The notes below the pieces were generated by a model, which was not told the DNA's origin, searched no databases, and saw only the letters and a list, made by a program, of their open reading frames with translations. A program made the translations under genes and the position numbers. DNA of 32,113 nucleotides from Macrostomum lignano (lineage: Eukaryota), in assembly GCA_002269645.1 (NCBI GenBank), contig NIVC01004893.1:1-32113 (forward strand), read 5' to 3'. Positions 1,197 through 31,282 of this stretch are shown in pieces; within the stretch, counting starts at the first letter, position 1, and each line of letters begins with the position of its first letter.

Positions 1197-1295
1197 GTGA
1201 GTCCACAGGGGCTCACTTTCACTCTGCCTCTCATGGCGGTTTTAATCCCAGTTTTCCTCCATGTAGACTCCTTAAACTCCTCATCCCTTATTATT

Positions 1296-1903: not shown

Positions 1904-1937
1904 AGCGCCCTGCTCCTCCATCTCTCATACTTTACAG

Positions 1938-2030
1938 TTTGACAGTCTCCTAATGGGTCCGTCTGACTCTCAGGACTCTCAGAGCGACAATGAAGACGAA
2001 AAACGACTGAAAGGGTCCGGCAGTCGGCAG
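1938..2030 (+). CDS. RPGR: putative 93-nt exon of RPGR-like gene (FDSLLMGPSDSQDSQSDNEDEKRLKGSGSRQ)
   Basis: tttacAG acceptor ends at 1937; cag|GTGAGT donor at 2031. Open only in phase 0, which does not match the phases of the neighbouring exons as written. Confidence 0.45.
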
Positions 2031-2207
2031 GTGAGTTATAGTTTTTGAAACCGCTCACTCAAAATAGATGCAAGCTATTCTACTGACAGTAGAAAGTAAG
2101 AAACATTAGTTTTTTCCAAAAGCGTAAAAATTGTTTGATATATCAAAATAGGCTACTCTTAGTAGAAAGTAAGTAATATAAGCAAAATTTTCCTTTCAAA
2201 ACTGCAG

Positions 2208-2668: not shown

Positions 2669-3621
2669 CTGAGTGCAGTTTAAAATGGGACTGGGAAGGC
2701 CAGATGCCAGGGCAGCCTGTAGCCCGGCGCTCCGAGCGTTTCTGTTCCAAGTTTGACCCGACGCGAGTTCGAATCCTGGCAGCTTAGTAATAGTAGAAAC
2801 CATGGGATTAATTTGAATTATTTGATTGCCCTACTAATAGTAGCTTATTAGTAGACGCGAGTTTGAATCTCAATAGCAATCAAAAAATTGAAAAGATAAT
2901 CATTTCAAATGCTCGATTGCCTTACTAATAGTAGTTTTCCGAAATTAGTAGATTTGGATTGTAAAAACCTTAAAGGAAATGAAAATATCTACTTTGAAGC
3001 AGTGTGCAGACACAGATTTAAATTTAAATTATTCAAATCCCCAAGCCTAAAGGCGAACTCTGGTTGCAATATTTTACATTTATAACTTTCTTATATGCAT
3101 ATTCTAATCTTTCCGCTACCAGTAGGCAGTTTTGCGTTTTGCAAAAAATCCACTATAACCCGCGACTCTCTTTAAGTAGCTCTGCCTACCTATTCAAACT
3201 TGACGATGAATTTTTTATGATTTCAGATTTCAGTGCAAAAAAGTCACGCCAGACTCGAGCAATTTTGATTTAGATTTATATTTTTGTTTCTTACGACAAT
3301 TACTCGCTGACTTCCTTGGTCTGACATATATTGTTGTTCGACACAAGTTTCACTCGCAATATTTTGGTGAGGCGGCCTGCCGACCTGCGATATCCAATGC
3401 CTCTAGTCGTGCCCTCTTTAAAGCTGCCACGTCTGTTTACTCAGTCGATAATCTTTTCGCAATATTTAATTTTAAAACGAGACTTTGTCATATGATTGAA
3501 TATTTTTAATATATTATCATTATATAATTGTTGAGACAGCAGAGATGCTGCCGTATACACCTCTACCTGCCTGCCTTCTGGCACCTGCAACTGAGAAAGC
3601 TGTGTTTCATTCAGCTTATTT

Positions 3622-4711
3622 TTGCATTGCAGTGTGTGGGGTTTGCATTGCAGTGTGTGGGGTTTGTGTTGCAGTGTGTGGGGTTTGTGTTGCAGTGTGT
3701 GGGGTTTGTGTTGCAGTGTGTGGGGTTTGTGTTGCAGTGTGTGGGGTTTTCATTGCAGTGTGTGGGGTTTTCATTGCAGTGTGTGGGGTTTGTGTTGCAG
3801 TGTGTGGGGTTTGTGTTGCAGTTTGTGGGGTTTGTGTTGCAGTGTGTGGGGTTTGTGTTGCAGTGTGTGGGGTTTGTGTTGCAGTGTGTGGGGTTTGTAT
3901 TGCAGTGTGGGGTTTGTGTTGCAGTGTGTGGGGTTTTCATTGCAGTGTGTGGGGTTTTCATTGCAGTGTGTGGGGTTGTGTTGCAGTGTGTGGGGTTTGT
4001 GTTGCAGTGTGTGGGGTTTGTGTTGCAGTGTGTGGGGTTTGTGTTGCAGTGTGTGGGGTTTGTATTGCAGTGTGGGGTTTGTGTTGCAGTGTGTGGGGTT
4101 TGCATTGCAGTGTGTGGGGTTTGAGTTGCAGTGTGTGGGGTTTGTGTTGCAGTGTGTGGGGTTTGTGTTGCAGTGTGTGGGGTTTGTGTTGCAGTGTGTG
4201 GGGTTTGTGTTGCAGTGTGTGGGGTTTGTGTTGCAGTGTGTGGGGTTTGTGTTGCAGTGTGTGGGGTTTGCATTGCAGTGTGTGGGGTTTGTGTTGCAGT
4301 GTGTGGGGTTTGTGTTGCAGTGTGTGGGGTTTGTGTTGCAGTGTGTGGGGTTTGCATTGCAGTGTGTGGGGTTTTCATTGCAGTGTGTGGGGTTTGCATT
4401 GCAGTGTGTGGGGTTTGTGTTGCAGTGTGTGGGGTTTGTGTTGCAGGGTGTGGGGTTTGTGTTGCAGTGTGTGGGGTTTGTGTTGCAGTGTGTGGGGTTT
4501 GTGTTGCAGTGTGTGGGGTTTGTGTTGCAGTGTGTGGGGTTTGTGTTGCAGGGTGTGGGGTTTGAGTTGCAGTGTGTGGGGTTTGTGTTGCAGGGTGTGG
4601 TGTTTGAGTTGCAGTGTGTGGGGTTTGTATTGCAGTGTGTGGGGTTTTGTGTTGCAGTGTGTGGGGTTTGTGTTGCAGTGTGTGGGGTTTGTGTTGCAGT
4701 GTGTGGGGTTT
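3622..4711. repeat. 21-bp minisatellite (TTGCAGTGTGTGGGGTTTGTG)
   Basis: About 52 tandem copies; source of the LQCVGFV / CCSVWGL / TPHTATQ pseudo-ORFs. Confidence 0.95.
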
Positions 4712-5261: not shown

Positions 5262-5803
<542 letters not shown>

Positions 5804-6029: not shown

Positions 6030-7732
6030 TGCATCTCTCTCTCTCTGGCATCCCCCATCATTCACTTTCTCTACTATCTCCCACCTCCCTCTCCCATCCC
6101 TCTCTCCCTACCCTCTCCCATCCCTCTCTCCCATCTCCCTCTCCCATCTCTCTCTCCCACCTCCCTCTCCCATCTCTCTCTCCCATCTCCCTCTCCCATC
6201 TTCCATCTCCCTCTCCCATCTCCCATCTCCCTCTCCCATCTCACTCTCCCACCTCCCTCTCCCATCTCACTCTCCACCTCCCTCTCCCATCTCTCTCTCC
6301 CATCTCTCTCTCCCATCCCTCTCTCCCATCTCCCTCTCCCATCTCTCTCTCCCATCTCTCTCTCCCATCTCCCTCTCCCACCTCCCTCTCCCTCTCCCAT
6401 CTCCCATCTCCCTCTCCCATCTTCCATCTCCCTCTCCCATCTCCCATCGCCCTCTCCCATCTCCCAACTCCCTCTTCCACCTCCCTCTCCCATCTCTTAT
6501 CTCCCTCTCCCACCTCCCTCTCCCATCTCCCATCTCCCTCTCCCATCTCCCATCTCCCACTCCCATCTCCCATCTCCCACTCCCATCTCCCATCTCCCTC
6601 TCCCATCTCCCATCTCCCTCTCCCATCTCCCATCTCCCTCTCCCATCTCCCATCTCCCTCTCCCATCTCCCTCTCCCATCTACCATCTCCCATCTCCCAT
6701 CTCCCATCTCCCTCTCTCATCTCCCATCTCCCTCTCACATCTTCCATCTCCCTCTCCCATCTCCCATCTCCCTCTCCCACCTCCCTCTCCCATCTCCCAT
6801 CTCCCTCTCCCATCTCCCATCTCCCTCTCCCTCTCCCATCTCCCTCTCCCATCTCCCATCTCCCTCTCCCATCTCCCATCTACCACTCCCATCTCCCTCT
6901 CCAATCTCCCTCTCCCATCTCCCTCTCCCATCTCCCTCTCTCATCTCCCTCTCCCATCTCCCTCTCCAATCTCCCATCTCCCATCTCCCTCTCCCATCTC
7001 CCTCTCCCATCTCCCTCTCCCATCTCCCTCTCCCATCTTCCATCTCCCTCTCCCATCTCCCATCTCCCTCTCCCATCTCCCATCTCCCTCTCCCATCTCC
7101 CATCTACCACTCCCATCTCCCTCTCCCATCTCCCTCTCCCATCTCCCATCTCCCTCTCCCTCTCCCATCTCCCTCTCCCATCTCCCATCTCCCTCTCCCA
7201 TCTCCCATCTACCACTCCCATCTCCCTCTCCAATCTCCCTCTCCCATCTCCCTCTCCCATCTCCCTCTCTCATCTCCCTCTCCCATCTCCCTCTCCAATC
7301 TCCCATCTCCCATCTCCCTCTCCCATCTCCCTCTCCCATCTCCCTCTCCCATCTCCCTCTCCCATCTTCCATCTCCCTCTCCCATCTCCCATCTCCCTCT
7401 CCCATCTCCCATCTCCCTCTCCCATCTCCCATCTACCACTCCCATCTCCCTCTCCCATCTCCCTCTCCCATCTCCCTCTCCCATCTCCCTCTCCCATCTC
7501 CCTCTCCCATCTCCCTCTCCCTCTCCCATCTCCCTCTCCCATCTCCCATCTCCCTCTCCCACCTCCCTCTCCCATCTGCCATCTCCCTCTCCCATCTCCC
7601 ACCTCCCTCTCCCATCTCCCATCTCCCTCTCCCATCTCCCACCTCCCTCTCCCATTTCTCACCTCCCTCTCCCATCTCCCTCTCCCATCTCCCATCTCCC
7701 TCAATCTCTTATCTCCCTCTCCCATCTCTCTC
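6030..7732. repeat. pyrimidine-rich satellite of CTCCCAT / CTCCCT units with an internal ~329-bp higher-order duplication
   Basis: + strand is almost all C/T with sparse A. The diagnostic variant run taccactcccatctccctctccaat recurs at 6881 and 7210. Confidence 0.92.
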
Positions 7733-9132: not shown

Positions 9133-9332
9133 ATTTAAGGAATATTTAAATTATAAGAAGACAATCTAACCGTCTTTCTAATCTCAGTATATCTGATACT
9201 CGGTACGTAGGATCTTCTTTGGGAAGTAAACGGTTGCATTTCTTCAGTCGCATTAGTCAGCCGAAGCAGCTAAGTCAAAAAGATTTTCCAACCTAAATAT
9301 GCTGCCTCCTACCCGGCTGTCAGTCCGCAGTG

Positions 9333-9782
9333 ATGCAGCCTCAAGCGGTGCACCCGGTGATGTCCCAGCCGCAGCCGTACGCCATGTACCCGTCTGCGCC
9401 ACCCGCCGCCCCGGTGGTTGGCCAGCAGCCGGTGCCACTGCAGCATCCGCCGCAGCAGCGCCAGTGGAACTCCGGCCTGTGCAGCTGCTTTGAAGACGTT
9501 GGCGGCTGCTGCCTGACCTACTTCTGCGGCCCCTGCGAGCTCTGCTGCTGCGTCTCGGAGCGCATGGGCGAGCAGTGCTGCACCCCGATCTGTCTGGGCT
9601 GCCTGGGCAGCTCCGTGACTCTCATCGCCTACCGAGTGAAGCTGAGGGCCAGGTACAACATCCAGGGCAGCATCTTGGACGACTGTTGCACCACGGTGTG
9701 CTGCGCCAGCTGCATGCAGTGTCAGCTCAAGAGGGAGCTGAACTACATTGAGAACCAGCTGGGTTACAAGCCGGCTTTTTGA
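9333..9782 (+). CDS. PLAC8: PLAC8/cornifelin-family cysteine-rich protein, copy A (149 aa)
   Basis: QWNSGLCSCFEDVGGCCLTYFCGPC...RMGEQCC...YRVKLRARYNIQGSILDDCCTTVCCASCMQCQLKRE matches the PLAC8 family pattern (W.SGLC.C.ED..C...FC.PC; R.RY.I.GS..DC...CC.C..CQ..RE). 19 Cys and a P/Q/Y-rich N-terminus. ATG is 2 nt after a CAG acceptor. Family-level call; orthology not established. Confidence 0.92.
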   Translation: MQPQAVHPVMSQPQPYAMYPSAPPAAPVVGQQPVPLQHPPQQRQWNSGLCSCFEDVGGCCLTYFCGPCELCCCVSERMGEQCCTPICLGCLGSSVTLIAYRVKLRARYNIQGSILDDCCTTVCCASCMQCQLKRELNYIENQLGYKPAF

Positions 9783-9882
9783 GAACTGAGAACTTGAGAA
9801 CTTGAGACCTTGGGAACTTGAGAACTTGAGAACTAGGGATTTATTGGCGACTGGGGTGGCACGCGCTTTGGAGTGTGGGCGT

Positions 9883-12424: not shown

Positions 12425-12831
12425 AAGCTTGGAGATTGTGAAGCTTGTGGATTTTCAAGCTTGGGGATTGTGAAGCTTGTGGATTGTGAAGCTTGGGGAT
12501 TGTGAGGCTTGAGGATTGTGAGACTTGGGGATTGTGAAGCTTGGGGATTGTGAGGCTTGGGGATTGAAGCTTGGGGATTGTGAAGCTTGGAGATTGTGAA
12601 GCTTGTGGATTTTCAAGCTTGGGGATTGTGAAGCTTGGGGATTGTGAGGCTTGGGGATTGTGAGGCTTGGGGATTGTGAAGCTTGGGGATTGTGAGGCTT
12701 GAGGATTGTGAGGCTTGAGGATTGTGAAGCTTGGGGATTGTGAAGCTTGGGGATTGTGAAGCTTGTGGATTGTGAAGCTTGGGGATTGTGAAGCTTGTGG
12801 ATTGTGAAGCTTGGGGATTCTGAGGCTTGGG
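12425..12831. repeat. 16-bp minisatellite (GATTGTGAAGCTTGGG) upstream of copy B
   Basis: About 25 copies. Confidence 0.92.
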
Positions 12832-13079
12832 CAACGTAAAGTAAATTCAGGGACTGTGAAATTTCAGCCAAATAAAGTAAGTAGATGGAATTTGAAATTT
12901 AAGGAAAGTTAAATTATAGGAAAATCTTTCTTTCTAATCTATGTAAATTTCATAACACTGTTGGATTTTTGTTAGAAATTGAAAGATTGCATTTTTCACT
13001 CATTTGAATTCTGAGATGTATAAGTTTGAATTTTCCTACCTAAATATGCTGCCTCCTACCCTGCCGTCAGTCCGCAGTG

Positions 13080-13487
13080 ATGCAGCCTCAAACAGTGCAC
13101 CCGGTGACCTCACAGCCGCAGGCGTACCCGATTGCTGTGGTTGGCCAGCAGCCGCCGCAGCAGCGCCAGTGGAATTCCGGCGTGTGCGGCTGCTTTGAAG
13201 ACATCTGCGGCTGCTGCCTGACCTACTGGTGCGGCCCCTGCGAGCTCTGCTGCTGCATCTCGGATCGTATGGGCGAGCAGTGCTGCACCCCGATCTGTCT
13301 GGGCTGCCTGGGCAGCTCCGTGACTCTCATCGCCTACCGAGTGAAGCTGAGGGCCAGATACAACATCCGGGGCAGCATCATAAGCGACTGTTGCACCACT
13401 GTGTTCTGCGGCAGCTGCGTGCAGTGCCAGATCAAGAGGGAGATGGATTACATTGAGAACCAGCTGGGCTGCAAGCCGGCTTTTTGA
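13080..13487 (+). CDS. PLAC8: PLAC8/cornifelin-family protein, copy B (135 aa)
   Basis: Intact ORF with the same motifs as copy A, a shorter N-terminus and 20 Cys. Family-level call. Confidence 0.92.
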   Translation: MQPQTVHPVTSQPQAYPIAVVGQQPPQQRQWNSGVCGCFEDICGCCLTYWCGPCELCCCISDRMGEQCCTPICLGCLGSSVTLIAYRVKLRARYNIRGSIISDCCTTVFCGSCVQCQIKREMDYIENQLGCKPAF

Positions 13488-13525
13488 GAACTCCTTGGAT
13501 AAAAACTCATTGACGACTGTGGGTT

Positions 13526-14329
13526 GTCTATGGTAGGGAAGTGTAGCGTGTCTACTGTCTATGGTAGGGAGCTACTGGTGTTTATGGTAGGGAGCTACTG
13601 GTGTCTATGGTAGGGAGCTACTGGTGTTTATGGTAGGGAGCTACTGGTGTCTATGGTAGGGAGCTACTGGTGTCTATGGTAGGGAGCTACTGGTGTCTAT
13701 GGTAGGGAGCTACTGGTGTCTATGGTAGGGAGCTGCTGGTGTCTATGGTAGAGAGCTGCGGGTGTCTATGGTAGGGAGCTACTGGTGTTTATGGTAGGGA
13801 GCTACTGGTGTCTATGGTAGGGAGCTACTGGTGTCTATGGTAGGGAGCTACTGGTGTCTATGGTAGGGAGCTGCTGGTGTCTATGGTAGAGAGCTGCGGG
13901 TGTCTATGGTAGGGAGCTACTGGTGTCTATGGTAGGGAGCTACTGGTGTCTATGGTAGGGAGCTACTGGTGTCTATGGTAGGGAGCTGCTGGTGTCTATG
14001 GTAGAGAGCTGCGGGTGTCTATGGTAGGGAGCTACTGGTGTCTATGGTAGGGAGCTACTGGTGTCTATGGTAGGGAGCTACTGGTGTCTATGGTAGGGAG
14101 CTACTGGTGTTTATGGTAGGGAGCTACTGGTGTTTATGGTAGGGAGCTACTGGTGTCTATGGTAGGGAGCTGCTGGTGTCTATGGTAGGGAGCTACTGGT
14201 GTCTATGGTAGGGAGCTGCTGGTGTCTATGGTAGGGAGCTACTGGTGTTTATGGTAGGGAGCTACTGGTGTTTATGGTAGGGAGCTACTGGTGTCTATGG
14301 TAGGGAGCTGTGGGGTGTCTATGGTAGAG
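13526..14329. repeat. 23-bp minisatellite downstream of copy B, starting with a C-type 31-bp unit
   Basis: About 33 copies of the A-type unit after one gtagcgtgtctact-containing unit. Confidence 0.92.
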
Positions 14330-14826
14330 ATTTCATCTATGTGAATTTTAATTTTGCATCCCGTGAAGTGAAAGCTATTGCTCTCGAAACTATTTAATAT
14401 TGATGTCGTTCCCTTGATACTACTAACAGCTATATGTTCTTAACGCTGTCACCTTCATGTAAGTTAAGATAGAGTTTAGTAATTTTTTTATACATGTGCA
14501 CGAAACATTTCTTCTTAACTTGTATACTATCTTGCCTTTATCTGAAATTGTTTATCGAAAACTCTCCCTTCTTTGAAACCGGATCTAAACGTCATTTGTT
14601 TAATACCTTTCAAGCTACAAAGCAACTCTTTAAATTTGAAGGAATACTTTTTCTAATTTTCTACTTTCTCTTCTATCGTAATACAAGATAAAAAGGAATT
14701 GATATTCAACTTTAAGTTATTCTTTTAATTCAGCAAGTAAAGCACAATAAAACGCACTATCTGAGCATATTTCCACCTAATACTGAATGTCGAATATTTT
14801 TTTTTTCAGCTACAAGTATTCCGTTC

Positions 14827-15089
14827 GAGACTGAGGTGTGGGGTTCGGGACTGAGGTGTGGGGTTCGGGACTGAGGTGTGGGGTTCGGGACTGAGGTTTC
14901 GGATTAGGTACTGAGGGTTGGGATTCGGTACTGAGGTTTCGGATTTGGTACTGAGGGGTGAGATTCGGTACTGAGGGGTGAAATTCGGGACTGGGGTGTG
15001 GGAATCGGGACTAAGGTGTGGGAATCGGGACTGGGGTGTGGGAATCGGGACTGGGGTGTGCGAATCGGGACTGAGGTGTGGGATTTGGT
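14827..15089. repeat. 20-bp G-rich minisatellite, unit 2
   Basis: Copy of 11014-11275; one substitution seen. Confidence 0.88.
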
Positions 15090-16240
15090 ACTTTTTTTGC
15101 AGCTCCATATCCTGCATATGGTAAAAGAATGTAGTTCATTTACGAGGCCTGCCCTACACAGGATTTGGTACTGAGGGGTTGCGAACAGGTTAGCTGTCCT
15201 TATCCGTCCTCTCTAAAACGGTTAGGAGAGAGAAGAAGAAAGGTAGATGTACACAGAGAGAGAAAGAAGAGCGGTCACGGCGTATTTAGTAAATAGGCTA
15301 CCAGTTTCAAGCCTGTGGGCTCTTCGTCAGGCCAAAAAAGTGTGTGTGTGAGTGTGTGAATGTGTGTGTGTGTGTGTGTGTTGAAGTCTAAGAGAGACAA
15401 ATAATTCATTAAACATTTCGTCAGTCTGCGGGTGCAGAGCTTCGAGAATAGCACTACATATTGCTACTGATAGCTATTTATATTCTCCTGTCATCTTCAG
15501 TTCACATAAGAGAAAGAATTTCAAACACAATGGCCTCTAAAGAGCCTAATATGAATACGAGGCTCACATCTCAGTACTCGCAGTACCGAGTATTATCTAA
15601 AGGCAGTGTTTTTTTATTTTGAGAACTAAAACGCATAGGCACAACACGGGTTTGAGGGGTTTGGGGTTTTGTGGGGTTTACGCTGTGCAGCTTCTCTCTG
15701 TTCTGTATCCTTACTAGGCAACCATCAGCAACCCCAAAACATTCTGTGCCACGTGTTGTCAAGCTACTGGCTTGGCCCTCAAACCTTAGCTTTAGCTATA
15801 TTTTCATTCGGGCATTGAGATCGGCTATAGTCTAGAGCTGGTCTGCTTGCGTAGCTGCGGTCGAGACGCGTAGAGGTCGTTGTTTTTTCTGCTCTGATGT
15901 TTTCGCAGATTGGCCAGACTGAGATGGGCTGCAGCCGCATACAGGGCGGGTGGAGTATGTCTCATACTTGACTATTTACACTGCAGCTGCTTCATTTCTT
16001 AAAGGCTGCCGGAGCTTAAGAGAGATTTGAATAAATTCATTCATATTCGATTCGGTAAGTTAACTGCATTTTAATAAACTCGTAGTTCCGGTACATCTTG
16101 TTAGTCTGTGGGTTCAGCGCTATTAATATAATAAATAGCACTACATATTGGGTACTTTCATAAACCCGAACATGTCAAATTTCCTAGGTCGAATTGCTAT
16201 TCACAATCATCTAACTCACGTAACTATGTGAACGAAAATC

Positions 16241-16517
16241 TTGGAGATTGTGAAGCTTGTGGATTTTCAAGCTTGGGGATTGTGAAGCTTGTGGATTGTG
16301 AAGCTTGGGGATTGTGAGGCTTGGGGATTGTGAAGCTTGGGGATTGTGAGGCTTGGGGATTGTGAGGCTTGGGGATTGTGAGGCTTGGGGATTGTGAGGC
16401 TTGAGGATTGTGAGGCTTGGGGATTGTGAAGCTTGGGGATTGTGAGGCTTGGGGATTGTGAAGCTTGGGGATTGTGAAGCTTGTGGATTGTGAAGCTTGG
16501 GGATTCTGAGGCTTGGG
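16241..16517. repeat. 16-bp minisatellite upstream of copy C
   Basis: About 17 copies, roughly 8 fewer than the paralogous array before B. Confidence 0.9.
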
Positions 16518-16765
16518 CAACGTATAGTAAATTCAGGGACTGTGAAATTTCAGCCAAATAAAGTAAGTAGATGGAATTTTAAATTTAAGGAAAGTTAAAT
16601 TATAGGAAAATCTTTCTTTCTAATCTATGTAAATTTCATAACACTGTTGGATTTTTGTTAGAAATTGAAAGATTGCATTCTTCACTCATTTGAATTCTGA
16701 GATGTATAAATTTGAATTTTCCTACCTAAATATACTGCCTCCTACCCTGCCGTCAGTCCGCAGTG

Positions 16766-17173
16766 ATGCAGCCTCAAACAGTGCACCCGGTGACCTCACA
16801 GCCGCAGGCGTACCCGATTGCTGTGGTTGGCCAGCAGCCGCCGCAGCAGCGCCAGTGGAATTCCGGCGTGTGCGGCTGCTTTGAAGACATCTGCGGCTGC
16901 TGCCTGACCTACTGGTGCGGCCCCTGCGAGCTCTGCTGCTGCATCTCGGAGCGCATGGGTGAGCAGTGTTGCACCCCGATCTGTCTGGGCTGCCTGGGCA
17001 GCTCCGTGACTCTCATCGCCTACCGAGTGAAGCTGAGGGCCAGGTACAACATCCAGGGCAGCATCATAAGCGACTGTTGCACCACTGTGTTCTGCGGCAG
17101 CTGCGTGCAGTGCCAGATCAAGAGGGAGCTGGATTACATTGAGAACCAGCTGGGCTGCAAGCCGGTTTTTTGA
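16766..17173 (+). CDS. PLAC8: PLAC8/cornifelin-family protein, copy C (135 aa)
   Basis: Intact ORF; 8 nt and 4 aa differences from copy B by manual comparison. Family-level call. Confidence 0.92.
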   Translation: MQPQTVHPVTSQPQAYPIAVVGQQPPQQRQWNSGVCGCFEDICGCCLTYWCGPCELCCCISERMGEQCCTPICLGCLGSSVTLIAYRVKLRARYNIQGSIISDCCTTVFCGSCVQCQIKRELDYIENQLGCKPVF

Positions 17174-17210
17174 GAACTCCTTGGATAAAAACTCCTTGAC
17201 GACTGTGGGT

Positions 17211-17502
17211 TGTCTATGGTAGGGAGCTGTAGCGTGTCTACTGTCTATGGTAGGGAGCTGTGGAGTGTCTAATGTCTATGGTAGGGAGCTGTGGAGTGTC
17301 TACTGTCTATGGTAAGGAGCTGTGGAGTGTCTACTGTCTATGGTAGGGAGCTGTGGAGTGTCTACTGTCTATGGTAGGGAGCTGTGGAGTGTCTACTGTC
17401 TATGGTAGGGAGCTGTAGCGTGTCTACTGTCTATGGTAGGGAGCTGTAGCGTATCTACTGTCTATGGTAGGGAGCTGTAGCGTGTCTACTGTCTATGGTA
17501 GG
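17211..17502. repeat. 31-bp minisatellite (ACTGTCTATGGTAGGGAGCTGTGGAGTGTCT) downstream of copy C
   Basis: Period 31 (agggagctg at 17221 and 17252); about 9 copies, degenerate to about 17600. Confidence 0.9.
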
Positions 17503-18122
17503 TAGAAGTGGGTTGTCTATGGTAGGGAGCCGTGGGTAGTCTATGATAGGGTAGATGTTGGGTGTCTATTTTATTGAGCTGTAGGTAGTTTATGCAATGG
17601 AAACGACTTTTATGTCTAGGATAAGGAGATATGTGGGCTGTCTAGTGGTGAGCTGTACGTGGGTGGGGTGTCGATGGCAGTAAACACCTTGACCTTTTTA
17701 TTGCATCCGGCAAAAAGTTGACTCTATTGCAAGAACAAAAATTCTCAGATATATCATTACACTCTAAACTCTGTTTAAGATTGACGTGCTTCACTTGATA
17801 CTACTATAATAGCTATATGCAGTGAAAATTTTCTTTTTCATTTGTATTCTGTCAGCAGGTCTTTATCTACGATGTCCTTATCTACGTAAAACACTTAATC
17901 AAAAGCTCTCCCTTCTTAATTTTATTTTTAACACTTTTCAAGCAAAAGCAACTTTTAATTATAGTTTCACCGTAAAGAATAAAATAAAATGTATCCTAAA
18001 CATTAAATATTTAGACCAGCAAGAAAAGCACATAAAAAAATTCATTTAGCTTTTTTCACTTAACTGTATGTCTAATACTGTGTTCATTGTTATTTTTCTT
18101 TTAGCTACAAAAATGCGGTTCG

Positions 18123-18419
18123 AGACTGGACTGTGGGTTCCGGACTGAGGTTTGGGGTTCGTGACTGAGGTGTGGGGTTTGTGACTGAGGTGTGGGGTTC
18201 GGGACTGAGGTGTGGGGTTCCGGACTGAGGTTTGGGGTTCGTGACTGAGGTGTGGGGTTCGTGACTGAGGTGTGGGGTTCGGGACTGAGGTGTGGGGTTC
18301 GTGACTGAGGTGTGGGAATCGGGACTGAGGTGTGGGGTTCATGACTGAGGTGTGGGGTTCGTGACTGAGGTGTGGGGTTCGTGACTGAGGTGTGGGGTTC
18401 GTGACAGAGGTGTGGGGTC
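18123..18419. repeat. 20-bp G-rich minisatellite (GTGACTGAGGTGTGGGGTTC) after copy C
   Basis: About 15 copies. Confidence 0.9.
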
Positions 18420-18815
18420 AGAGAAGTGTACAGTTCGATGGCACGCAATGTTGTCTTTTGAGTGGCTGATGCGAGTAACAAATGGTGAAACAAATAATAG
18501 ACAAGTTAATTGCGCAACGCGAGCAGATGTGCAGATTATTCGGGAGAAACCGTTTCACCAAACCAATAATAAAATATATCTTCAAATGGGAATGGCGCTG
18601 GGGACTACGCAATGTAGGATCTTCGGAGACAGCTATAACTGGAGGAAATAACGCTACAAAAATAATTATAAATCATAATTCAGCAAGCCTCCAACCTCAG
18701 GCAACTGCAGTTGAGTAATTTACAACAATTCGAACAGGTTAGCTGCTCTAATCTGTCCTCTCTGAAGCGGTTAGTAGAGAGAAGAAAAATAGAGAGATAA
18801 CCGAGTCAGATAACC

Positions 18816-19887
<1,072 letters not shown>

Positions 19888-20675
19888 CCTCTAATCCCGA
19901 AGGCGCTGACACAGCAAAGCAACAAGACAAACAAAAAAGTTAAGAAGTGTTAGTTGCCGATATTTCGAATTCGAGTAATATCTCGTACTTCCATTTTTAT
20001 AGCAGCGCAGAAAATCGTTGGATAGAGAACTCATGCAGAGAGATTTTTAATAATTCATTCAACATTTCTGTCTGTCTGCGGGTTCAGCGCTCCTAGAATA
20101 GCATTACATATTGCTACTAAAAGCTATTTATATTCTTTTGTCATCTTCTGCTCACATGACCGAAAGACTTTTAAACACCAACACTCGCCTCGAAAAGCCC
20201 CTATTGTGAATGCGAGGCTCACATCTCAAAACTCGCAGTATTATCAAAGGCAGCGCTTTTTACTGCCAACTAAAACGCAAGCTCGGACCACGAACCTTAG
20301 CTTTTGTTATTGTCCTTTGGGCATTGAGATCGGCTATAGTCTAGAGCTGGTCTGCTTGAGGTCCTTGTTTTCTGCTGTTTTTCCGGATTGGCCAGACTAA
20401 GGTGGGCTGCAGCCGCATACTCGTGTTTTCATTTTTAAAAGGCTGCCGAAGCTTAAGAAACTTGAATTATTTCAATCATATTCGATTCGGTAAGTTAACT
20501 GCCTTTTCTTTAGCTCGTAGTTTAGGTAGTTTAGCTCTTTTAGAGTTGCAATACATACATGTACCGGTATTGGGTACTTTCATAATCCCAAAAATATTCG
20601 AATATAACACTTCCTAAGTCGTCTAGCTATTCAAAATCATCTCACTGACGTACCCTAACATGAACGAAGATTGAA

Positions 20676-21249: not shown

Positions 21250-21576
21250 TGTTAAATTACGTTACATTAGGCGCGCAGCCCAGCCCTACCATTAAATAAA
21301 CCTTCTGCTCTGCCAGCGCTCGCAATTAGCGCTACATCAGAGATTGTGAAATTTGAGCAATTAAAAATTCAATTAAAGATTCAGTTGGAAATTTAATGAA
21401 AGTTGAATTATAGAAAAATCTGTCTTTCTAATCTATGTAAATTTCATAACACTGTTGGATCTTTATTAGAAACTGAGCGATTGCATTCTTCACCTTGACT
21501 TCCGAACCGATTAGATTTATAAATTGATTTTACAACCTAAATATGCTGCCTCCTACCCGGCTGTCAGTTCGCAGAG

Positions 21577-22074
21577 ATGCAGCCTCAAACGGTGTACACG
21601 GTGATGTCCCAGCCGCAGCCGTACCCGTCTGCGTTTGTTGGCCAGGAGCCGTTGCCACAGCATCCGCCGCAGCCGTACCCGTCTGCGGTTGTTGGCAAGC
21701 AGCCGAGGCCACAGCATCCGCCGCAGCAGTGCCAGTCGAACTCCGACCAGTGCAGTTGCTTTGATGACGACTGCAACTGCTGCCTGACCGATTGCGGCTT
21801 CTGCGAGCTCTGCTGCTGCATCTCGGATTGTATGGATTAATAGTGCTGCACCCCGATCTGTCTTGACTGCCTCGGCAGCTCAGTGACTCTCATCGAAAAA
21901 CTCAGAAAAAAAACGAAAAACTGTTATCGTGTAACCCAGGTACAATATCCAAGGCAGCATCATAAACGACTGTTGCACCACTGTGTTCTGCGCCAGCTGC
22001 GTGCAGTGTCAGATCAAGAGGGAGATGGATTACATTGAGAACCATGAAGTTGGGCTGCAAGCCGGCTTTTTTGA
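21577..22074 (+). pseudogene. PLAC8-family copy D, truncated (87-aa ORF, then TAA TAG; 3' half disrupted)
   Basis: Homologous to A-C. Stops at 21838-21843 replace E-Q; an A-rich 40-bp tract at 21896-21935 replaces 21 bp; a further indel lies near 22044-22052. Confidence 0.85.
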
Positions 22075-22111
22075 GAAATCGCTGGATAAAAACTCATTGA
22101 CGACTGTGGGT

Positions 22112-23602
22112 TGTCTATGGTAGGGAGCTGTTGGGTGTCTATGGTATGGAGCTGTTGGGTGTCTATGGTAGGAGAGCTGTTGGGTGTCTATGGTAGGGAG
22201 CTGTTGGGTGTCTATGGTATGGAGCTGTTGGGTGTCTATGGTAGGGAGCTGTTGGGTGTCTATGGTAGGGAGCTGTTGAGTGTCTATGGTATGGAGCTGT
22301 TGGGTGTCTATGGTAGGGCTGTTGAGTGTCTATGGTATGGAGCTGTTGGGTGTCTATGGTAGGGAGCTGTTGAGTGTCTATGGTAGGGAGCTGTTGGGTG
22401 TCTATGGTAGGGAGCTGTTGGGTGTCTATGGTATGGAGCTGTTGGGTGTCTATGGTAGGGAGCTGTTGGGTGTCTATGGTAGGGAGCTGTTGGGTGTCTA
22501 TGGTAGGAGCTGTTGGTGTCTATGGTAGGGAGCTGTTGGGTGTCTATGGTAGGGAGCTGTTGGGTGTCTATGGTAGGGAGCTGTTGGGTGTCTATGGTAG
22601 GGAGCTGTTGGGTGTCTATGGTAGGGAGCTGTTGGGTGTCTATGGTAGGGAGCTGTTGGGTGTCTATGGTAACGAGCTGTTGGGTGTCTATGGTAGGGAG
22701 CTGTTGGGTGTCTATGGTAGGGAGCTGTTGGCTGTCTATGGTAGGGAGCTGTTGGGTGTCTATGGTAGGGAGCTGTTGAGTGTCTATGGTATGGAGCTGT
22801 TGGCTGTCTATGGTAGGGAGCTGTTGGGTGTCTATGGTAGGGAGCTGTTGGGTGTCTATGGTAGGGAGCTGTTGGGTGTCTATGGTAGGGAGCTGTTGGG
22901 TGTCTATGGTAGGGAGCTGTTGGGTGTCTATGGTAACGAGCTGTTGGGTGTCTATGGTAGGGAGCTGTTGGGTGTCTATGGTAGGGAGCTGTTGGGGTCT
23001 ATGGTAGGGAGCTGTTGGGTGTCTATGGTAGGGAGCTGTTGGGTGTCTATGGTAGGGAGCTGTTGGGTGTCTATGGTAGGGAGCTGTTGGCTGTCTATGG
23101 TAGGGAGCTGTTGGGTGTCTATGGTAGGGAGCTGTTGGCTGTCTATGGTAGGGAGCTGTTGGGTGTCTATGGTAGGGAGCTGTTGGGTGTCTATGATAGG
23201 GAGCTGTTGGGTGTCTATGGTAGGGAGCTGTTGGGTGTCTATGGTAGGGAGCTGTTGGGTGTCTATGGTAACGAGCTGTTGAGTGTCTATGGTAGGGAGC
23301 TGTTGAGTGTCTATGGTAGGAGCTGTTGGCTGTCTATGGTAGGGAGCTGTTGGCTGTCTATGGTAGGGAGCTGTTGGTGTCTATGGTAGGGAGCTGTTGG
23401 GTGTCTATGATAGGGAGCTGTTGGGTGTCTATGGTAGGGAGCTGTTGGGTGTCTATGGTAGGGAGCTGTTGGGTGTCTATGGTAACGAGCTGTTGAGTGT
23501 CTATGGTAGGGAGCTGTTGAGTGTCTATGGTAGGGAGCTGTTGAGTGTCTATGGTAGGGAGCTGTTGAGTGTCTATGGTAGATAGACGTGGGGTGTCTAT
23601 AG
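22112..23602. repeat. 24-bp minisatellite (GGTGTCTATGGTAGGGAGCTGTTG) downstream of copy D
   Basis: About 62 copies; source of the GVYGRELL pseudo-ORFs. Confidence 0.95.
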
Positions 23603-23962
23603 TAGGCTGCGCAGAAAAGTTTCTTGTTTATTTGTATTCTTTCTGGCTTTATCTACAGTGAGGTCCTTATCCAAGTAAAATACTTATCAAAAGCTCTCCC
23701 CTCTGAAACCCGATCTAAATTTTATTACTTACTTATTTATCAACTATTTACTTTACAAGGTAAACAGCAATTGTTTAAGTTTTAACGCATGTTTTTAATT
23801 GTCTTATTGTAAAAGATAAAAAAAATTGATCTTAAACATTATTTTAGAAGAAAAGCACATAAAACATATATTTTAGTTTTTTTCACCTGACTGAATGTCT
23901 AATATTGCGTTCATAGTTTATTTCTCCTTTATCTACAAATATGCGGTTCGAGGTGACTGTGG

Positions 23963-28232: not shown

Positions 28233-30471
28233 GTGAAGAGCTATATGGATTGTGAAGCTTGGGGATTGTGAAGCTTGGGGATTGTGAAGCTTGTGGATTG
28301 TGAAGCTTGGGGATTGTGAAGCTATATGGATTGTGAAGCTTGGGGATTGTGAAGCTTGTGGATTGTGAAGCTATATGGATTGTGAAGCTTGTGGCTTGTG
28401 AAGCTTGGGGATTGTGAAGCTTGTGGATTGTGAAGCTTGGGGATTGTGAAGCTATATGGATTGTGAAGCTTGGGGATTGTGAAGCTTGGGGATTGTGAAG
28501 CTTGTGGATTGTGAAGCTATATGGATTGTGAAGCTTGGGGATTGTGAAGCTATATGGATTGTGAAGCTTGTGGATTGTGAAGCTTGGGGATTGTGAAGCT
28601 ATATGGATTGTGAAGCTTGGGGATTGTGAGGCTTGGGGATTGTGAAGCTTGGGGATTGTGAAGCTTGTGGATTGTGAAGCTTGGGGATTGTGAAGCTTGG
28701 GGATTGTGAAGCTTGGGGATTGTGAAGCTTGGGGATTGTGAAGCTTGTGGATTGTGAAGCTTGTGGATTGTGAAGCTTGGGATTGTAAAGCTATATGGAT
28801 TGTGAAGCTTGGGGATTGTGAAGCTATATGGATTGTGAAGCTTGGGGATTGTGAAGCTTGGGGATTGTGAAGCTTGTGGATTGTGAAGCTTGTGGATTGT
28901 GAAGCTTGGGGATTGTGAAGCTATATGGATTGTGAAGCTTGGGGATTGTGAAGCTTGGGGATTGTGAAGCTTGTGGATTGTGAAGCTTGGGGATTGTGAA
29001 GCTTGTGGATTGTGAAGCTTGGGATTGTGAAGCTGGTGGATTGTGAAGCTTGTGGATTGTGAAGCTTGTGGATTGTGAAGCTTGGGGATTGTGAAGCTAT
29101 ATGGATTGTGAAGCTTGGGGATTGTGAAGCTTGTGGATTGTGAAGCTTGGGGATTGTGAAGCTATATGGATTGTGAAGCTTGGGGATTGTGAAGAAGCTT
29201 GTGGATTGTGAAGCTTGTGGATTGTGAAGCTTGGGGATTGTAAAGCTATATGGATTGTGAAGCTTGGGGATTGTGAAGCTATATGGATTGTGAAGCTTGG
29301 GGATTGTGAAGCTTGGGGATTGTGAAGCTTGTGGATTGTGAAGCTTGTGGATTGTGAAGCTTGGGGATTGTGAAGCTATATGGATTGTGAAGCTTGGGGA
29401 TTGTGAAGCTTGGGGATTGTGAAGCTTGTGGATTGTGAAGCTTGGGGATTGTGAAGCTTGAGGATTGTGAAGCTTGGGGATTGTGAAGCTGGTGGATTGT
29501 GAAGCTTGTGGATTGTGAAGCTTGTGGATTGTGAAGCTTGGGGATTGTGAAGCTATATGGATTGTGAAGCTTGGGGATTGTGAAGCTTGGGGATTGTGAA
29601 GCTTGGGGATTGTGAAGCTTGGGGATTGTGAAGCTTGGGGATTGTGAAGCTCGGGGATTGTGAAGCTCGGGGATTGTGAAGCTTGAGAATTGTGAAGCTT
29701 TTGGATTTAGAAGCTTTTGGGTTGTGAAGCTCGGGGATTGTGAAGCTCGGGATTGTGAAGCTTGTGGATTGTGAAGCTCGGGGATTGTAAAGCTTTTGGG
29801 TTGTGAAGCTCAGGGATTGTGAAGCTCGGGGATTGTGAAGCTTGTGGATTATGAATCTCGGGGATTGTAAAGCTTGTGCATTGTGAAGCTCGGGGATTGT
29901 GAAGCTCGGGGATTGTGAAGCTCGGGGATTGTGAAGCTCGGGGATTGTGAAGCTCGGGGATTGTGAAGCTTTTGGATTTAGAAGCTTTTGGGTTTGTGAA
30001 GCTCGGGGATTGTGAAGCTTTTGGGCTGTGAAGCTCGGGGATTGTGAAGCTCGGGGATTGTGAAGCTCGGGGATTGTGAAGCTTGTGGATTGTGAAGCTC
30101 GGGGATTGTGAAGCTCGGGGATTGTGAAGCTTGTGGATTATGAAGCTCGGGGATTGTAAAGCTTGTGGATTGTGAAGCTCGGGGATTGTGAAGCTCGGGG
30201 ATTGTGAAGCTTTTGGATTTAGAAGCTTTTGGGTTGTGAAGCTCGGGGATTGTGAAGCTTTTGGGTTGTGAAGCTCGGGGATTGTGAAGCTCGGGGATTG
30301 TGAAGCTTGTGGATTGTGAAGCTCGGGGATTGTGAAGCTTGTGGATTATGAAGCTCGGGGATTGTGAAGCTTGAGGATTGTGAAGCTTGTGGATTGTGAA
30401 GCTCGGGATTGTGAAGCTTGAGGATTGTGAAGCTCGGGAATTGTGAAGCTCGGGGATTGTGAAGCTCGGGG
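28233..30471. repeat. expanded 16-bp minisatellite upstream of copy E (~2.2 kb)
   Basis: About 140 copies. GCTT and GCTATAT variants dominate before about 29650, GCTC variants after. Confidence 0.95.
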
Positions 30472-30729
30472 AACGTACAGTAAATTCAGGGATTGTGAAA
30501 TTTGAGCGATTTAAAATTACTCGTAGTTTGAAATTTAAGGAAATTTAAATTATACATGTAGGAAAATCTCTTTCTAATCTGAGTAAATTTTATAACACTT
30601 GTTGGATATTTATTAGAAACTGAGCGATTGCATTTTTTCACGCATTTGACTTCCGAATCGATTAGATGTATATAAATTCATTTTCCAACCTAAATGTGCT
30701 GCCTCCTACCCGGCTGTCAGTTCGCAGAG

Positions 30730-31207
30730 ATGCAGTCTCATCAAACGCTATACACGGTTATGTCTCAGCCGCAGCCGTACCCGTCTGCGGTGGTTGGCCA
30801 GCAGCCGGTGCCACAGCATCCGCCGCAGCCGTCCCCGTCTGCGATGGTTGGCCGGCAGCCGAGGCCACAGCATCCGCCGCAGCAGTGCCAGTCGAACTCC
30901 GACCTGTGCAGCTGCTTTGATGACGACTGCGATTGCTGCCTGACCGATTGCGGCCCTGCGAGCTCTGCTGCTGCATCTCGGAGTGTATGGGTGAATAGTG
31001 CTGCACCCGATCTGTCTTGGCTGCCTCGGCAGCTCCGTGACTCTCATCGCCTACCGAGTGAAGCTGAGGGCCAGGTACAACATCCAGGGCAGCATCTTGG
31101 ACGACTGTTGCACCACGGTGTGCTGCGCCAGCTGCATGCAGTGTCAGATCAAGAGGGAGCTGAACTACATTGAGAACCAGCTGGGCTGCAAGCCGGCCGG
31201 CTTTTTG
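30730..31207 (+). pseudogene. PLAC8-family copy E, truncated or frameshifted
   Basis: ATG at 30730; 1-bp losses in C-runs at 30954-30956 and 31006-31008; TAG at 30996-30998 at the same codon as in copy D; ccgg duplication just before the ancestral stop. Confidence 0.85.
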
Positions 31208-31282
31208 AGAAATGAGAACTTGAGAACTTGAGAACTAGGGATTTATTGGCGACTGGGGTGGCACGCCTTTTGGAGTGTGGGC

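What the first reader, a model, noticed from the sequence alone, without database searches (positions are those of the whole stretch)
21577..21843. Copies D and E may encode a new ~88-aa Pro/Gln-rich, Cys/Asp-rich mini-protein rather than being dead pseudogenes
Seen: D and E share a CAG>TAG stop at the same codon and a set of upstream changes: a duplicated PQHPPQ segment, R>C twice, W>S, G>D, FED(V/I)(G/C)G>FDDDC(N/D), and a 1-codon deletion. D has a clean 87-aa frame ending CQSNSDQCSCFDDDCNCCLTDCGFCELCCCISDCMD* (12 Cys and 8 acidic residues in 36 aa), and its disruptive indels all lie after the stop. In E, the only pre-stop lesion is one missing C in a C-run; restoring it gives an 89-aa protein ending CELCCCISECMGE*. 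Known: metallothioneins are short Cys-rich metal binders; CYSTM proteins have a P/Q/Y-rich N-terminus and a C-terminal Cys cluster. Inference: truncation may have produced a metallothionein-like or CYSTM-like derivative. Several shared changes are C>T or G>A transitions, which neutral decay would also give.
Basis: partly seen in the sequence, partly recalled or inferred. Interest (0 to 1): 0.7.

Follow-up and report, generated by a model that had tools for sequence, protein, structure and literature searches.

The report
Truncated PLAC8 gene copies in flatworm
Copies D and E are stop-codon-truncated duplicates in a five-copy tandem array of PLAC8 genes of the flatworm Macrostomum lignano; E is broken, D keeps a transcribed, already-annotated 87-codon reading frame, and the sequence evidence cannot settle whether D is an expressed pseudogene (more likely) or a young acidic, cysteine-rich mini-protein.

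Summary
The window is the whole contig NIVC01004893.1 of Macrostomum lignano. It carries five tandem intronless PLAC8 (PF04749) copies. A, B and C are intact. D and E share a CAG>TAG stop, a 54-bp in-frame duplication, R>C twice, W>S, several changes to Asp and a one-codon deletion.

- D's 87-aa ORF is already a CDS in GenBank, and that annotation is RNA-seq-derived.
- D recurs at 99.4-99.5% identity, with the same TAA-TAG stops, on two other contigs.
- E has two 1-bp deletions in C-runs, one on each side of the stop. Its 3' half is 98% copy-A-like, so it is a mosaic.
- Ten of D's 12 Cys are inherited from the PLAC8 parent.
- D matches no PLAC8, CYSTM or metallothionein profile and has no relatives elsewhere.

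Selection tests are split.
- Neutral-looking: the D branch has 10.5 nonsynonymous, 2.5 synonymous and 1 nonsense change, and D-E coding divergence (8.8%) is close to flank divergence (11.4%).
- Not neutral-looking: 5 of 8 shared amino-acid changes (one more creates the stop) give Asp (P about 0.005), no Cys codon is hit (P about 0.05), and D has no pre-stop indel.

Verdict: expressed pseudogene relic about 0.55; functional mini-protein in D about 0.3.

The parts
9333..9782 (+). Copy A: intact intronless PLAC8 gene, 149 aa
   Evidence: ORF. Pfam PF04749, 63 bits. Identical protein P0003 is annotated in M. lignano.
13080..13487 (+). Copy B: intact PLAC8 gene, 135 aa
   Evidence: ORF. Pfam PF04749, 57 bits.
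16766..17173 (+). Copy C: intact PLAC8 gene, 135 aa; annotated on this contig
   Evidence: P0002.
21527..21576 (+). Conserved 50-nt block in front of D's ATG. It contains a TAAATAT motif and a TCAGT motif about 28 nt apart. It could also be read as a pyrimidine tract plus CAG. Its role as core promoter or trans-splice acceptor is inferred, not tested.
   Evidence: The 23-nt core CCTAAATRTRCTGCCTCCTACCC occurs exactly five times, once before each copy, with 0 expected by chance. D and E differ at 2 of 50 positions here.
21577..21840 (+). Copy D: 87-aa ORF (P/Q-rich N-terminus plus Cys/Asp-rich tail) ending at its own TAA; a called CDS in the GenBank record
21612..21727 (+). 54-bp in-frame tandem duplication (2.1 copies) inside the P/Q-rich part, shared with E
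   Evidence: TRF; alignment.
21730..21837 (+). Cys/Asp-rich segment of D (codons 52-87): 12 Cys, 8 acidic, 0 basic residues
21838..21843 (+). Double stop: D-specific TAA (GAA>TAA) followed by the TAG shared with E (CAG>TAG)
   Evidence: The same stops are present in D1 (L002) and D2 (L003).
21844..22074 (+). Untranslatable former 3' half of D's PLAC8 gene, B/C-like. It has an A-rich replacement at 21896-21935 (net +19 nt) and a 4-bp insertion at 22044-22047.
22104..23606 (+). 24-bp satellite directly downstream of D. The equivalent array downstream of D1 on contig NIVC01001403.1 is annotated as a 401-aa CDS (ELLGVYGR repeats), so transcript models run through it.
   Evidence: TRF.
30730..30998 (+). 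Copy E, D-type 5' part: ATG at 30730, 3-bp insertion near codon 3, one C missing in the run at 30954-30956 (frameshift), shared TAG at 30996-30998
30999..31231 (+). Copy E, former 3' half. A second 1-bp deletion sits in the C-run at 31005-31007. The last D/E-shared derived site is 31027. From somewhere in 31028-31097 onward the sequence is copy-A-type (165/168 identical), including the TTGAGAAC repeats. A GCCG duplication lies at about 31192-31201.
   Evidence: Pfam hits the C-terminal half of PLAC8.

Best explanation
D and E are unprocessed, truncated duplicates in a five-unit tandem array of intronless PLAC8 genes of Macrostomum lignano. Each unit has the same layout: 16-bp satellite, gene, 23/24-bp satellite, 20-bp satellite.

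Shown:
- One CAG>TAG mutation in the common ancestor of D and E cut the ORF after the Cys-rich N-terminal half, just before the most hydrophobic segment (CCTPICLGCLGSSVTLIAY) and the C-terminal CQxKRE motif.
- E then lost one base on each side of the stop, and its 3' half was overwritten by copy-A-type sequence.
- D gained a second stop (TAA), a net +19-nt replacement and a +4 insertion in the dead 3' half, and 14 mostly nonsynonymous substitutions in the retained ORF.

Inferred:
- The copy-A-type 3' half of E came from unequal crossing-over or gene conversion.
- D is still transcribed, and so was annotated as an 87-aa hypothetical protein, because the conserved 5' block is intact and the CDS has no intron. 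A premature stop without a downstream exon junction should not trigger junction-dependent mRNA decay.
- The peptide has no maintained function today, so D is an expressed pseudogene relic. This allows that the truncated or pre-truncation form was briefly under directional selection in the D/E ancestor.
For: - Homology and lesions.
- D lineage since the split from E: 10.5 nonsynonymous, 2.5 synonymous and 1 nonsense change. This fits omega = 1 and rejects the omega of about 0.4 seen between intact paralogs (P = 0.037).
- D-E divergence in the retained ORF (23/261, 8.8%) is not lower than in the non-coding upstream flank (22/193, 11.4%; P = 0.43).
- E, the only sister copy, is frameshifted inside the supposed ORF and is not annotated.
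- D has lost the residues that open the PLAC8 domain (W, G). It no longer matches PF04749, while copy A cut at the same point still does (E = 8.6e-5).
- Exhaustive searches find no D-like peptide family.
- A crude neutral model gives D's ORF about a 0.05-0.2 chance of staying open by luck, which is not compelling once the case was picked because the ORF is open.
- Precedent: a 93-aa truncated PLAC8 ORF in soybean (GmFWL13) is read as pseudogenisation (PMC12467093).
Against: - On the shared D/E branch, 12 substitutions in codons 46-89 create 5 new Asp and 2 Cys. P(at least 5 Asp) is about 1e-5 and P(any residue at least 5 times) is 0.004-0.007.
- All 6 charge-changing replacements on that branch go negative (P = 0.03).
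- No Cys codon has been hit in D or E since their split (P about 0.05), nor on the shared branch (P about 0.04).
- D has no indel in 261 nt before the stop, against 2 frameshifting indels in 231 nt after it.
- D's ORF is open on all three contigs.
- D is transcribed and annotated.
- Fast-evolving Cys-rich peptides typically show omega near 1 with an invariant Cys framework, so the N:S ratio alone does not exclude function.
Confidence: 0.55

Rival explanations
1. D (and the D/E ancestor) encodes a functional mini-protein born by truncation. It would be a soluble, strongly acidic peptide (net charge -7, 12 Cys), made from the N-terminal Cys-rich half of a PLAC8 protein and reshaped by directional replacement of hydrophobic or basic residues with Asp and Cys. 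A thiolate/carboxylate metal-binding or redox role is plausible. On this reading E is a redundant copy that died later, or its missing C is an assembly error.
For: - Directional Asp gain and acidification on the shared branch.
- All Cys codons spared.
- No indel and no premature stop in D's ORF, although substitutions accumulated at the neutral rate.
- ORF open on three contigs.
- Conserved 5' block kept.
- RNA-seq-based CDS annotation.
- Both of E's 1-bp losses are in C homopolymers, a typical long-read/454 error context.
- The Cys-rich CC...CPC region of plant PLAC8 proteins is credited with metal recognition (PMC12467093).
Against: - The D branch N:S ratio is neutral. It includes radical changes inside the Cys motif (P75F, L58Q, D67N) and a new nonsense codon.
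- Coding divergence equals flank divergence.
- E is frameshifted as assembled.
- Every positive signal is P = 0.005-0.1 on very few events, and some were noticed after the fact.
- The blocks TGCTGCCTGACC and TGCGAGCTCTGCTGCTGC are identical in all five copies even at silent sites. Micro-conversion could therefore spare Cys codons without selection on D.
- The Asp shift may predate the stop.
- No translation evidence, no homologous family, and no confident fold (pLDDT 51).
Confidence: 0.3
2. The D/E ancestor was for a time a functional, full-length but divergent PLAC8 paralog. The Asp/Cys replacements were fixed by selection in that full-length protein. The TAG came later and both copies have simply decayed since. 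This is a sub-scenario of the pseudogene reading.
For: - The only two D/E-shared derived substitutions in the old frame after the stop (CTG>CTT, CTG>CTC; before position 31027 in E) are both synonymous.
- Cys codons were spared on the shared branch.
- The directional Asp gain needs some selection.
Against: - W>S and G>D remove the residues that open the PLAC8 domain. Y>D plus the codon deletion shorten and acidify the CC...C(G)PC spacer. These changes are hard to reconcile with canonical PLAC8 function.
- Only two informative post-stop sites remain, because both 3' halves were later overwritten by A-type or B/C-type sequence.
Confidence: 0.2
3. The apparent truncation or ORF is an assembly or annotation artefact, or D acts only as RNA.
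For: - The assembly is long-read based with known redundancy.
- D2 shows three 'deletions' exactly at the sites where D has T and E has G, which looks like a consensus artefact.
- A neighbouring annotated 401-aa CDS is merely translated satellite, so the annotation contains spurious CDSs.
Against: - TAA-TAG is identical on three independent contigs, and TAG is shared with E.
- An older assembly's gene model also contains the D-type N-terminus (P0005).
- Nothing points to an RNA-level role.
Confidence: 0.05

Closest known systems
PLAC8 / DUF614 family (Pfam PF04749: animal PLAC8/onzin and cornifelin, plant PCR and FW2.2-like/CNR proteins)
   Same: D and E are PLAC8 genes by descent. Their DNA aligns along the whole gene with intact copies A-C (76-88% identity). 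They sit in the same repeat-unit architecture, behind the same conserved 5' block, and have the same P/Q-rich N-terminus and the Cys cluster CC..C..CELCCC.
   Different: - The ORF stops before the hydrophobic middle segment and the C-terminal CQxKRE motif.
- The W..G opening of the domain is lost.
- The CC-to-C spacer is one residue shorter, and D has lost the Pro.
- D gives no Pfam hit even at E <= 10.
Truncated PLAC8 pseudogenes, e.g. soybean GmFWL13 (93-aa truncated ORF) as described in PMC12467093
   Same: A short ORF left from a PLAC8 paralog in an expanded family, lacking the transmembrane region and C-terminal motif.
   Different: D keeps the whole Cys-rich N-terminal motif region, is annotated from transcript evidence, and shows directional Asp gain and Cys sparing. 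I have not seen either pattern reported for GmFWL13, and I did not examine that gene.
CYSTM (cysteine-rich tail-anchored transmembrane module, Pfam PF12734; Venancio & Aravind 2010, from my own knowledge)
   Same: Small protein with a P/Q/Y-rich N-terminus and a C-terminal Cys cluster. UniProt even names a fused older gene model of this locus 'CYSTM domain-containing protein' (P0005).
   Different: - D, E and P0005 give no PF12734 hit at E <= 10.
- D's Cys tail carries 8 acidic residues. Its best 19-aa hydropathy window is 1.28 and contains 2 Asp and 1 Glu, so it is not a plausible membrane anchor.
- The P/Q-rich N-terminus is inherited from the PLAC8 parent.
Metallothioneins
   Same: The last 37 residues are 32% Cys with CxC, CC, CxxC and CCC spacings, and the size is under 10 kDa. 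A metal-thiolate role is conceivable.
   Different: - No metallothionein profile hit.
- 50 Cys-free N-terminal residues.
- Aromatic residues present (3 Phe, 3 Tyr).
- Cys positions are those of the PLAC8 parent (10 of 12 inherited).
- Metal binding is untested.

Membership tests
PLAC8 (PF04749) | Match to the Pfam profile above the gathering score (34.4 bits) | tested here: not met
   A, B and C score 57-63 bits. D gives no hit even at E <= 10. Copy A truncated at the same codon still gives 23.8 bits (E = 8.6e-5). E's post-stop ORF matches profile positions 55-101.
PLAC8 (PF04749) | Conserved W-x-x-G opening of the domain (W45 of copy A aligns to profile position 1) | tested here: not met
   QWNSG in A-C becomes QSNSD in D and E (W54S, G57D).
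PLAC8 (PF04749) | CC/CL-x4-CPC-type Cys motif (PMC12467093) | tested here: not met
   A-C have CCLTY[FW]CGPC. D has CCLTDCGFC, one residue shorter with Pro lost. E has CCLTDCG followed by a frameshift.
PLAC8 (PF04749) | Hydrophobic middle segment and C-terminal Q-x-x-R-E-L motif in the translated product | tested here: not met
   Both lie after TAA/TAG. In D they are also behind two frameshifting indels.
PLAC8 (PF04749) | Common descent with family members (full-length DNA homology, same locus architecture) | tested here: met
   Alignment A1, BLAST, and the five-fold conserved 5' block.
CYSTM (PF12734) | Profile match | tested here: not met
   D, the E N-terminal piece and P0005 give no PF12734 hit at E <= 10.
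CYSTM (PF12734) | C-terminal Cys-rich hydrophobic transmembrane tail | tested here: not met
   The best 19-aa Kyte-Doolittle window in D is 1.28 (CCLTDCGFCELCCCISDCM) and contains 3 acidic residues. The tail has a net charge of -8.
Metallothionein | Sequence membership in a metallothionein family | tested here: not met
   No Pfam family hit at E <= 10, no PDB relative, and no relatives among 1.84 billion representatives.
Metallothionein | High Cys content in CxC/CC/CxxC motifs, few or no aromatic residues, metal-thiolate clusters | tested here: inconclusive
   Cys are 12 of 37 in the tail but 12 of 87 overall, and 6 aromatic residues are present. Metal binding cannot be tested with these tools.
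Unprocessed (duplicated) pseudogene | Disabling lesion relative to intact paralogs | tested here: met
   Shared TAG. D also has TAA, a +19 replacement and a +4 insertion. E also has two 1-bp deletions and a +4 duplication.
Unprocessed (duplicated) pseudogene | Neutral evolution of the remaining ORF (omega about 1, rate equal to non-coding flank, random lesions) | tested here: inconclusive
   The N:S ratio and the rate look neutral. Asp directionality, Cys sparing and the absence of indels in D do not.
Unprocessed (duplicated) pseudogene | No translation or function of the product | not testable with these tools
   Transcription is implied by the RNA-seq-derived annotation. No Ribo-seq or proteomic data were available.

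The most novel reading that the evidence does not exclude
A microprotein born by nonsense truncation. The N-terminal Cys-rich half of a PLAC8 gene was cut free of its hydrophobic half. It was then driven by selection towards a soluble, strongly acidic, 12-Cys peptide (5 Asp and 2 Cys gained; W, Y, F/W and both Arg lost). It is still maintained (frame and all Cys intact, transcribed) in copy D of M. lignano, possibly as a metal- or redox-active peptide.
Probability: 0.3. Interest if true: 0.6.

Novelty: new member of a known kind. Interest (0 to 1): 0.35.

Why it matters
If D is only a relic, this is an ordinary pseudogenised member of a dynamic tandem gene array in a highly repetitive genome. 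It is mainly useful as an annotation caution. GenBank carries the 87-aa ORF as a protein, and on a sister contig it carries a 401-aa 'protein' that is translated satellite.

If D is functional, it would be a datable example of a new microprotein arising by truncation of a membrane-associated Cys-rich protein followed by directional acidification. It would also give a natural dissection of the PLAC8 Cys motif region, whose biochemical role (metal recognition versus structure) is still debated. M. lignano has transgenesis and RNAi, so the question can be tested directly.

Tried and rejected
It is not interpretable. E's 3' half is 98% copy-A-type and D's is B/C-type, so only about 34 nt of genuine D/E-type post-stop sequence remain.
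- AlphaFold2 on copy A (4-sequence alignment, pLDDT 37) and on D (single sequence, pLDDT 51). Both are too poor to use, so no fold search was run.
- PDB sequence search with A and D: nothing relevant.
- Exhaustive HMMER search with D against 1.84 billion representatives. The single hit, P0006, is a spurious repetitive ORF that matches CGFC.LLCC by composition.
- Word-indexed searches with D and B: only the M. lignano PLAC8 cluster. D itself is absent from that protein collection although it is annotated, so the lack of D-like peptides there is weak evidence.
- Literature searches for Macrostomum + PLAC8 and for the locus tags Mlig028285 and Mlig013937, plus the supplements of PMC5816591: nothing.
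- Name look-up of the 401-aa satellite CDS, to link it to D's transcript: not in the collection.
- E-type copies on the two sister contigs could not be fetched. The loci end 4-5 kb after D1 and D2, and no annotated protein lies beyond.
- The bacterial-type promoter/terminator scan is irrelevant for this eukaryote.
- Stop-codon read-through was rejected for D, because of the double stop plus downstream frameshifts.
- The three indels in D2 (-2, -1 with a restored frame) were not counted as evidence. They sit exactly at D/E-variable G/T sites and look like a consensus artefact.

Full report
**Identity of the window.** The 87-aa query finds one relative, a 149-aa PLAC8 protein of the flatworm Macrostomum lignano. 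Exact look-ups show that the window is the complete 32,113-bp contig NIVC01004893.1 of assembly GCA_002269645.1 (Mlig_3_7). The window carries five same-strand copies of an intronless PLAC8 gene:
- A, 9333-9782, 149 aa
- B, 13080-13487, 135 aa
- C, 16766-17173, 135 aa
- D, from 21577
- E, from 30730

A-C match Pfam PF04749 at 57-63 bits. Every copy sits in the same repeat unit. A 16-bp satellite lies upstream, a 23/24/31-bp satellite directly downstream, and then a 20-bp satellite. D and E therefore arose by segmental tandem duplication, not retroposition. A 23-nt block 38-41 nt upstream of each ATG occurs exactly five times in the window, with 0 expected by chance.

**Checking the observation.**
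- D (21577-21843) reads as 87 codons followed by TAA and TAG.
- D and E share CAG>TAG at the same codon, a preceding GAG>GAA, an in-frame 54-bp duplication, R52C, W54S, G57D, E63D, V/I65D, G67D/N, Y72D, loss of the F/W codon and R85C.
- D's frame-breaking lesions all lie after the stop. They are a 40-nt A-rich stretch replacing 21 nt at 21896-21935, and a 4-bp insertion at 22044-22047.
- E lacks one C in the run at 30954-30956. The two flanking pieces read ...CLTDCG and PCELCCCISECMGE*.

Four additions:
- D's ORF ends at its own TAA, one codon before the shared TAG.
- E has a second 1-bp loss in another C-run after the stop (31005-31007) and a 4-bp duplication near the old C-terminus.
- E is a mosaic. 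Up to position 31027 it is D-type (240/264 identical to D before the stop). From the next informative sites onward it is copy-A-type, including the TTGAGAAC flank repeats (165/168 to A, 140/168 to D). D's dead 3' half is B/C-like.
- The Cys richness is mostly inherited. The same segment has 9 Cys in A, 10 in C and 12 in D. Acidic residues rise from 5 to 8 and basic residues fall from 2 to 0.

**What the public record adds.** The 87-aa D ORF is a called CDS on this contig, and so is C. A, B and E are not. The GenBank annotation of Mlig_3_7 was produced from genome-guided RNA-seq transcript models (StringTie/TACO/TBONE), with ORFs from TransDecoder (PMC5730564). A transcript model therefore exists at a D-type locus. 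This is indirect evidence of transcription and says nothing about translation.

Two other contigs carry the same array at 96-100% identity: NIVC01001403.1 (A', B', D1) and NIVC01002155.1 (A, C-type, D2). Each has one B/C-type unit where the window has two.
- D1 differs from D by one replacement (G40S) before the stop and keeps the 87-aa ORF.
- D2 shows -2 and -1 'deletions' 18 nt apart, and its frame is restored (86 aa). All three missing bases are exactly where D has T and E has G. I read this as a consensus artefact or polymorphism.
- Both D1 and D2 keep TAA-TAG.

Directly downstream of D1, GenBank annotates a 401-aa CDS that is simply the translated 24-bp satellite (ELLGVYGR repeats). Transcript models therefore run from the D region into the satellite, and the annotation contains spurious CDSs. 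The nearest downstream plus-strand AATAAA after each copy lies 0.8-2.8 kb on, beyond the first satellite for A, B and D.

**Family tests.** D and the pre-frameshift piece of E match no Pfam family even at E <= 10. Copy A truncated at the same codon still matches PLAC8 positions 1-34 (E = 8.6e-5). There is no CYSTM (PF12734) or metallothionein hit. That includes P0005, a fused older gene model of this locus that UniProt names 'CYSTM domain-containing'. D's Cys tail contains 8 acidic residues. Its best 19-residue hydropathy window is 1.28, and the only window reaching 1.56 in the intact proteins lies after the stop. D therefore lacks a plausible membrane anchor. The PDB holds nothing related. 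An exhaustive HMMER scan of 1.84 billion representatives returns only a spurious repeat ORF. AlphaFold models of A and D are unusable (pLDDT 37 and 51).

**Selection analysis: what looks neutral.**
- Nei-Gojobori estimates give omega of 0.39-0.57 between intact A and B/C. D versus E before the stop gives 0.48 (6.5 synonymous, 12.5 nonsynonymous changes), which is not significantly below 1 (P = 0.08-0.19).
- Polarising with the other copies, the D branch carries 2.5 synonymous, 10.5 nonsynonymous and 1 nonsense change. This is compatible with omega = 1 and rejects omega = 0.4 (P = 0.037).
- The E branch carries 4 synonymous and 5 nonsynonymous changes.
- D-E divergence in the retained ORF (8.8%) is not lower than in the upstream non-coding flank (11.4%, P = 0.43). 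The last 50 nt before the ATG differ at 2 of 50 positions.

**Selection analysis: what does not look neutral.**
- On the shared D/E branch, 12 substitutions in codons 46-89 produce 5 new Asp, 2 Cys, 1 Ser and the stop. In simulations P(at least 5 Asp) is about 1e-5, and P(any residue gained at least 5 times) is 0.004-0.007.
- All six charge-changing replacements on that branch go negative (P = 0.03).
- No Cys codon has been hit since D and E split (P about 0.05), nor on the shared branch (P about 0.04).
- The D lineage has 14 substitutions but no indel in 261 nt before the stop. Its dead 3' half has two frameshifting indels in 231 nt, which gives a Poisson P(0) of about 0.10. Staying free of premature stops has P of about 0.47.

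Caveats on these signals:
- All rest on a handful of events, and some patterns were chosen after seeing the data.
- The Asp changes may not be independent. GAC-GTC-TGC-GGC-TGC became GAC-GAC-TGC-GAC-TGC, and Y>D accompanies the codon deletion.
- Two Cys-bearing blocks are identical in all five copies even at silent sites, so micro-conversion could protect them.
- The control, D's untranslatable 3' half, also has 0 of 7 private substitutions in Cys codons, but the test has no power.

**Interpretation.** One nonsense mutation in the D/E ancestor removed the hydrophobic and C-terminal half of a PLAC8 protein. E is dead as assembled. D is an open, transcribed ORF that evolves at the neutral rate with a neutral N:S ratio, yet with its frame and Cys framework untouched. 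Because the CDS is uninterrupted, a premature stop would not create a downstream exon junction. A stable transcript is therefore expected whether or not the peptide matters. This step is an inference from the established junction-dependent NMD model.

I rate 'expressed pseudogene relic' at about 0.55 and 'functional acidic Cys-rich mini-protein in D' at about 0.3. A compatible sub-scenario (about 0.2, overlapping the first) is that directional selection acted on a divergent full-length paralog before the stop. The only two shared post-stop substitutions being synonymous hints at this, but n = 2.

**Comparison with known families.** By descent D and E are PLAC8 genes. As products they fail every defining PLAC8 feature tested, and they fail the CYSTM and metallothionein tests that could be run. 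The closest described situation is a truncated PLAC8 ORF read as a pseudogene in an expanded plant family (GmFWL13, 93 aa; PMC12467093). The metal-recognition role credited to the CC...CPC region of plant PCR proteins makes a metal-binding derivative conceivable but untested.

**Verdict.** As a kind of thing it is a new member of a known kind: a truncated paralog in a tandem array, already carried in GenBank as a hypothetical protein. Interest is 0.35, because of the unexplained directional Asp gain and Cys/frame sparing, which cheap experiments in a tractable model could resolve.

Noticed in passing
L002:16097-17302 (NIVC01001403.1), equivalent to window 22104-23606: GenBank annotates a 401-aa protein that is nothing but the translated 24-bp satellite downstream of D1 (ELLGVYGR repeats). 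It is a spurious CDS, and it shows that transcript models run through the satellite.
   Followed up: partly
window 30999-31236 compared with 9600-9834: Copy E is a mosaic. It is D-type up to 31027, then 98% identical to copy A, including the TTGAGAAC octamer repeats of A's 3' flank. This indicates unequal crossing-over or gene conversion within the array. D's 3' half is B/C-like.
   Followed up: yes
window 12425-20000 compared with L002 and L003: The window has two B/C-type units (B and C, 3.7 kb apart, about 98% identical). Each of the two sister contigs has only one (B-type on NIVC01001403.1, C-type on NIVC01002155.1). The copy number varies between haplotypes or homeologs.
   Followed up: partly
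L003:14843-15480 (D2), equivalent to window 21634-21652: D2's three missing bases fall exactly on the three sites where D has T and E has G, next to a G/C difference at 21646. This looks like a consensus artefact at polymorphic sites, or a clustered multi-nucleotide variant. It suggests that a D-type allele with the ancestral AVVGQQPVP sequence exists.
   Followed up: partly
window 9292-9314, 13039-13061, 16725-16747, 21536-21558, 30689-30711: A 23-nt block (CCTAAATRTRCTGCCTCCTACCC) plus the following ~27 nt are almost invariant in front of all five copies, while the rest of the upstream flank differs by 11-31%. It contains TAAATAT and TCAGT motifs about 28 nt apart, and also a pyrimidine tract followed by CAG. 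It could be a core promoter or a trans-splice acceptor. E has TAAATGT.
   Followed up: partly
window 1-2700: The 5' end of the contig is colinear (about 97%) with the 3' part of a 712-aa RCC1-repeat (alsin-RLD-like) gene annotated on NIVC01001403.1.
   Followed up: no
window 1296-1901, 3627-4711, 5262-5803, 6077-7732, 18819-19880, 28247-30472: Roughly half of the contig is micro- or minisatellite. Examples: a 12-bp array, a 21-bp array, (TCTG)135, a 13-bp array of 1.6 kb, (AG)533, and a 2.2-kb 16-bp satellite in front of E. These arrays generate most of the window's long ORFs.
   Followed up: no
window cols 322-333 and 349-366 of alignment A1 (e.g. 21778-21789 and 21802-21819 in D): The stretches TGCTGCCTGACC and TGCGAGCTCTGCTGCTGC are identical in all five copies, including silent sites, although silent divergence elsewhere is 0.13-0.3. 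This may reflect micro-conversion or nucleotide-level constraint.
   Followed up: no
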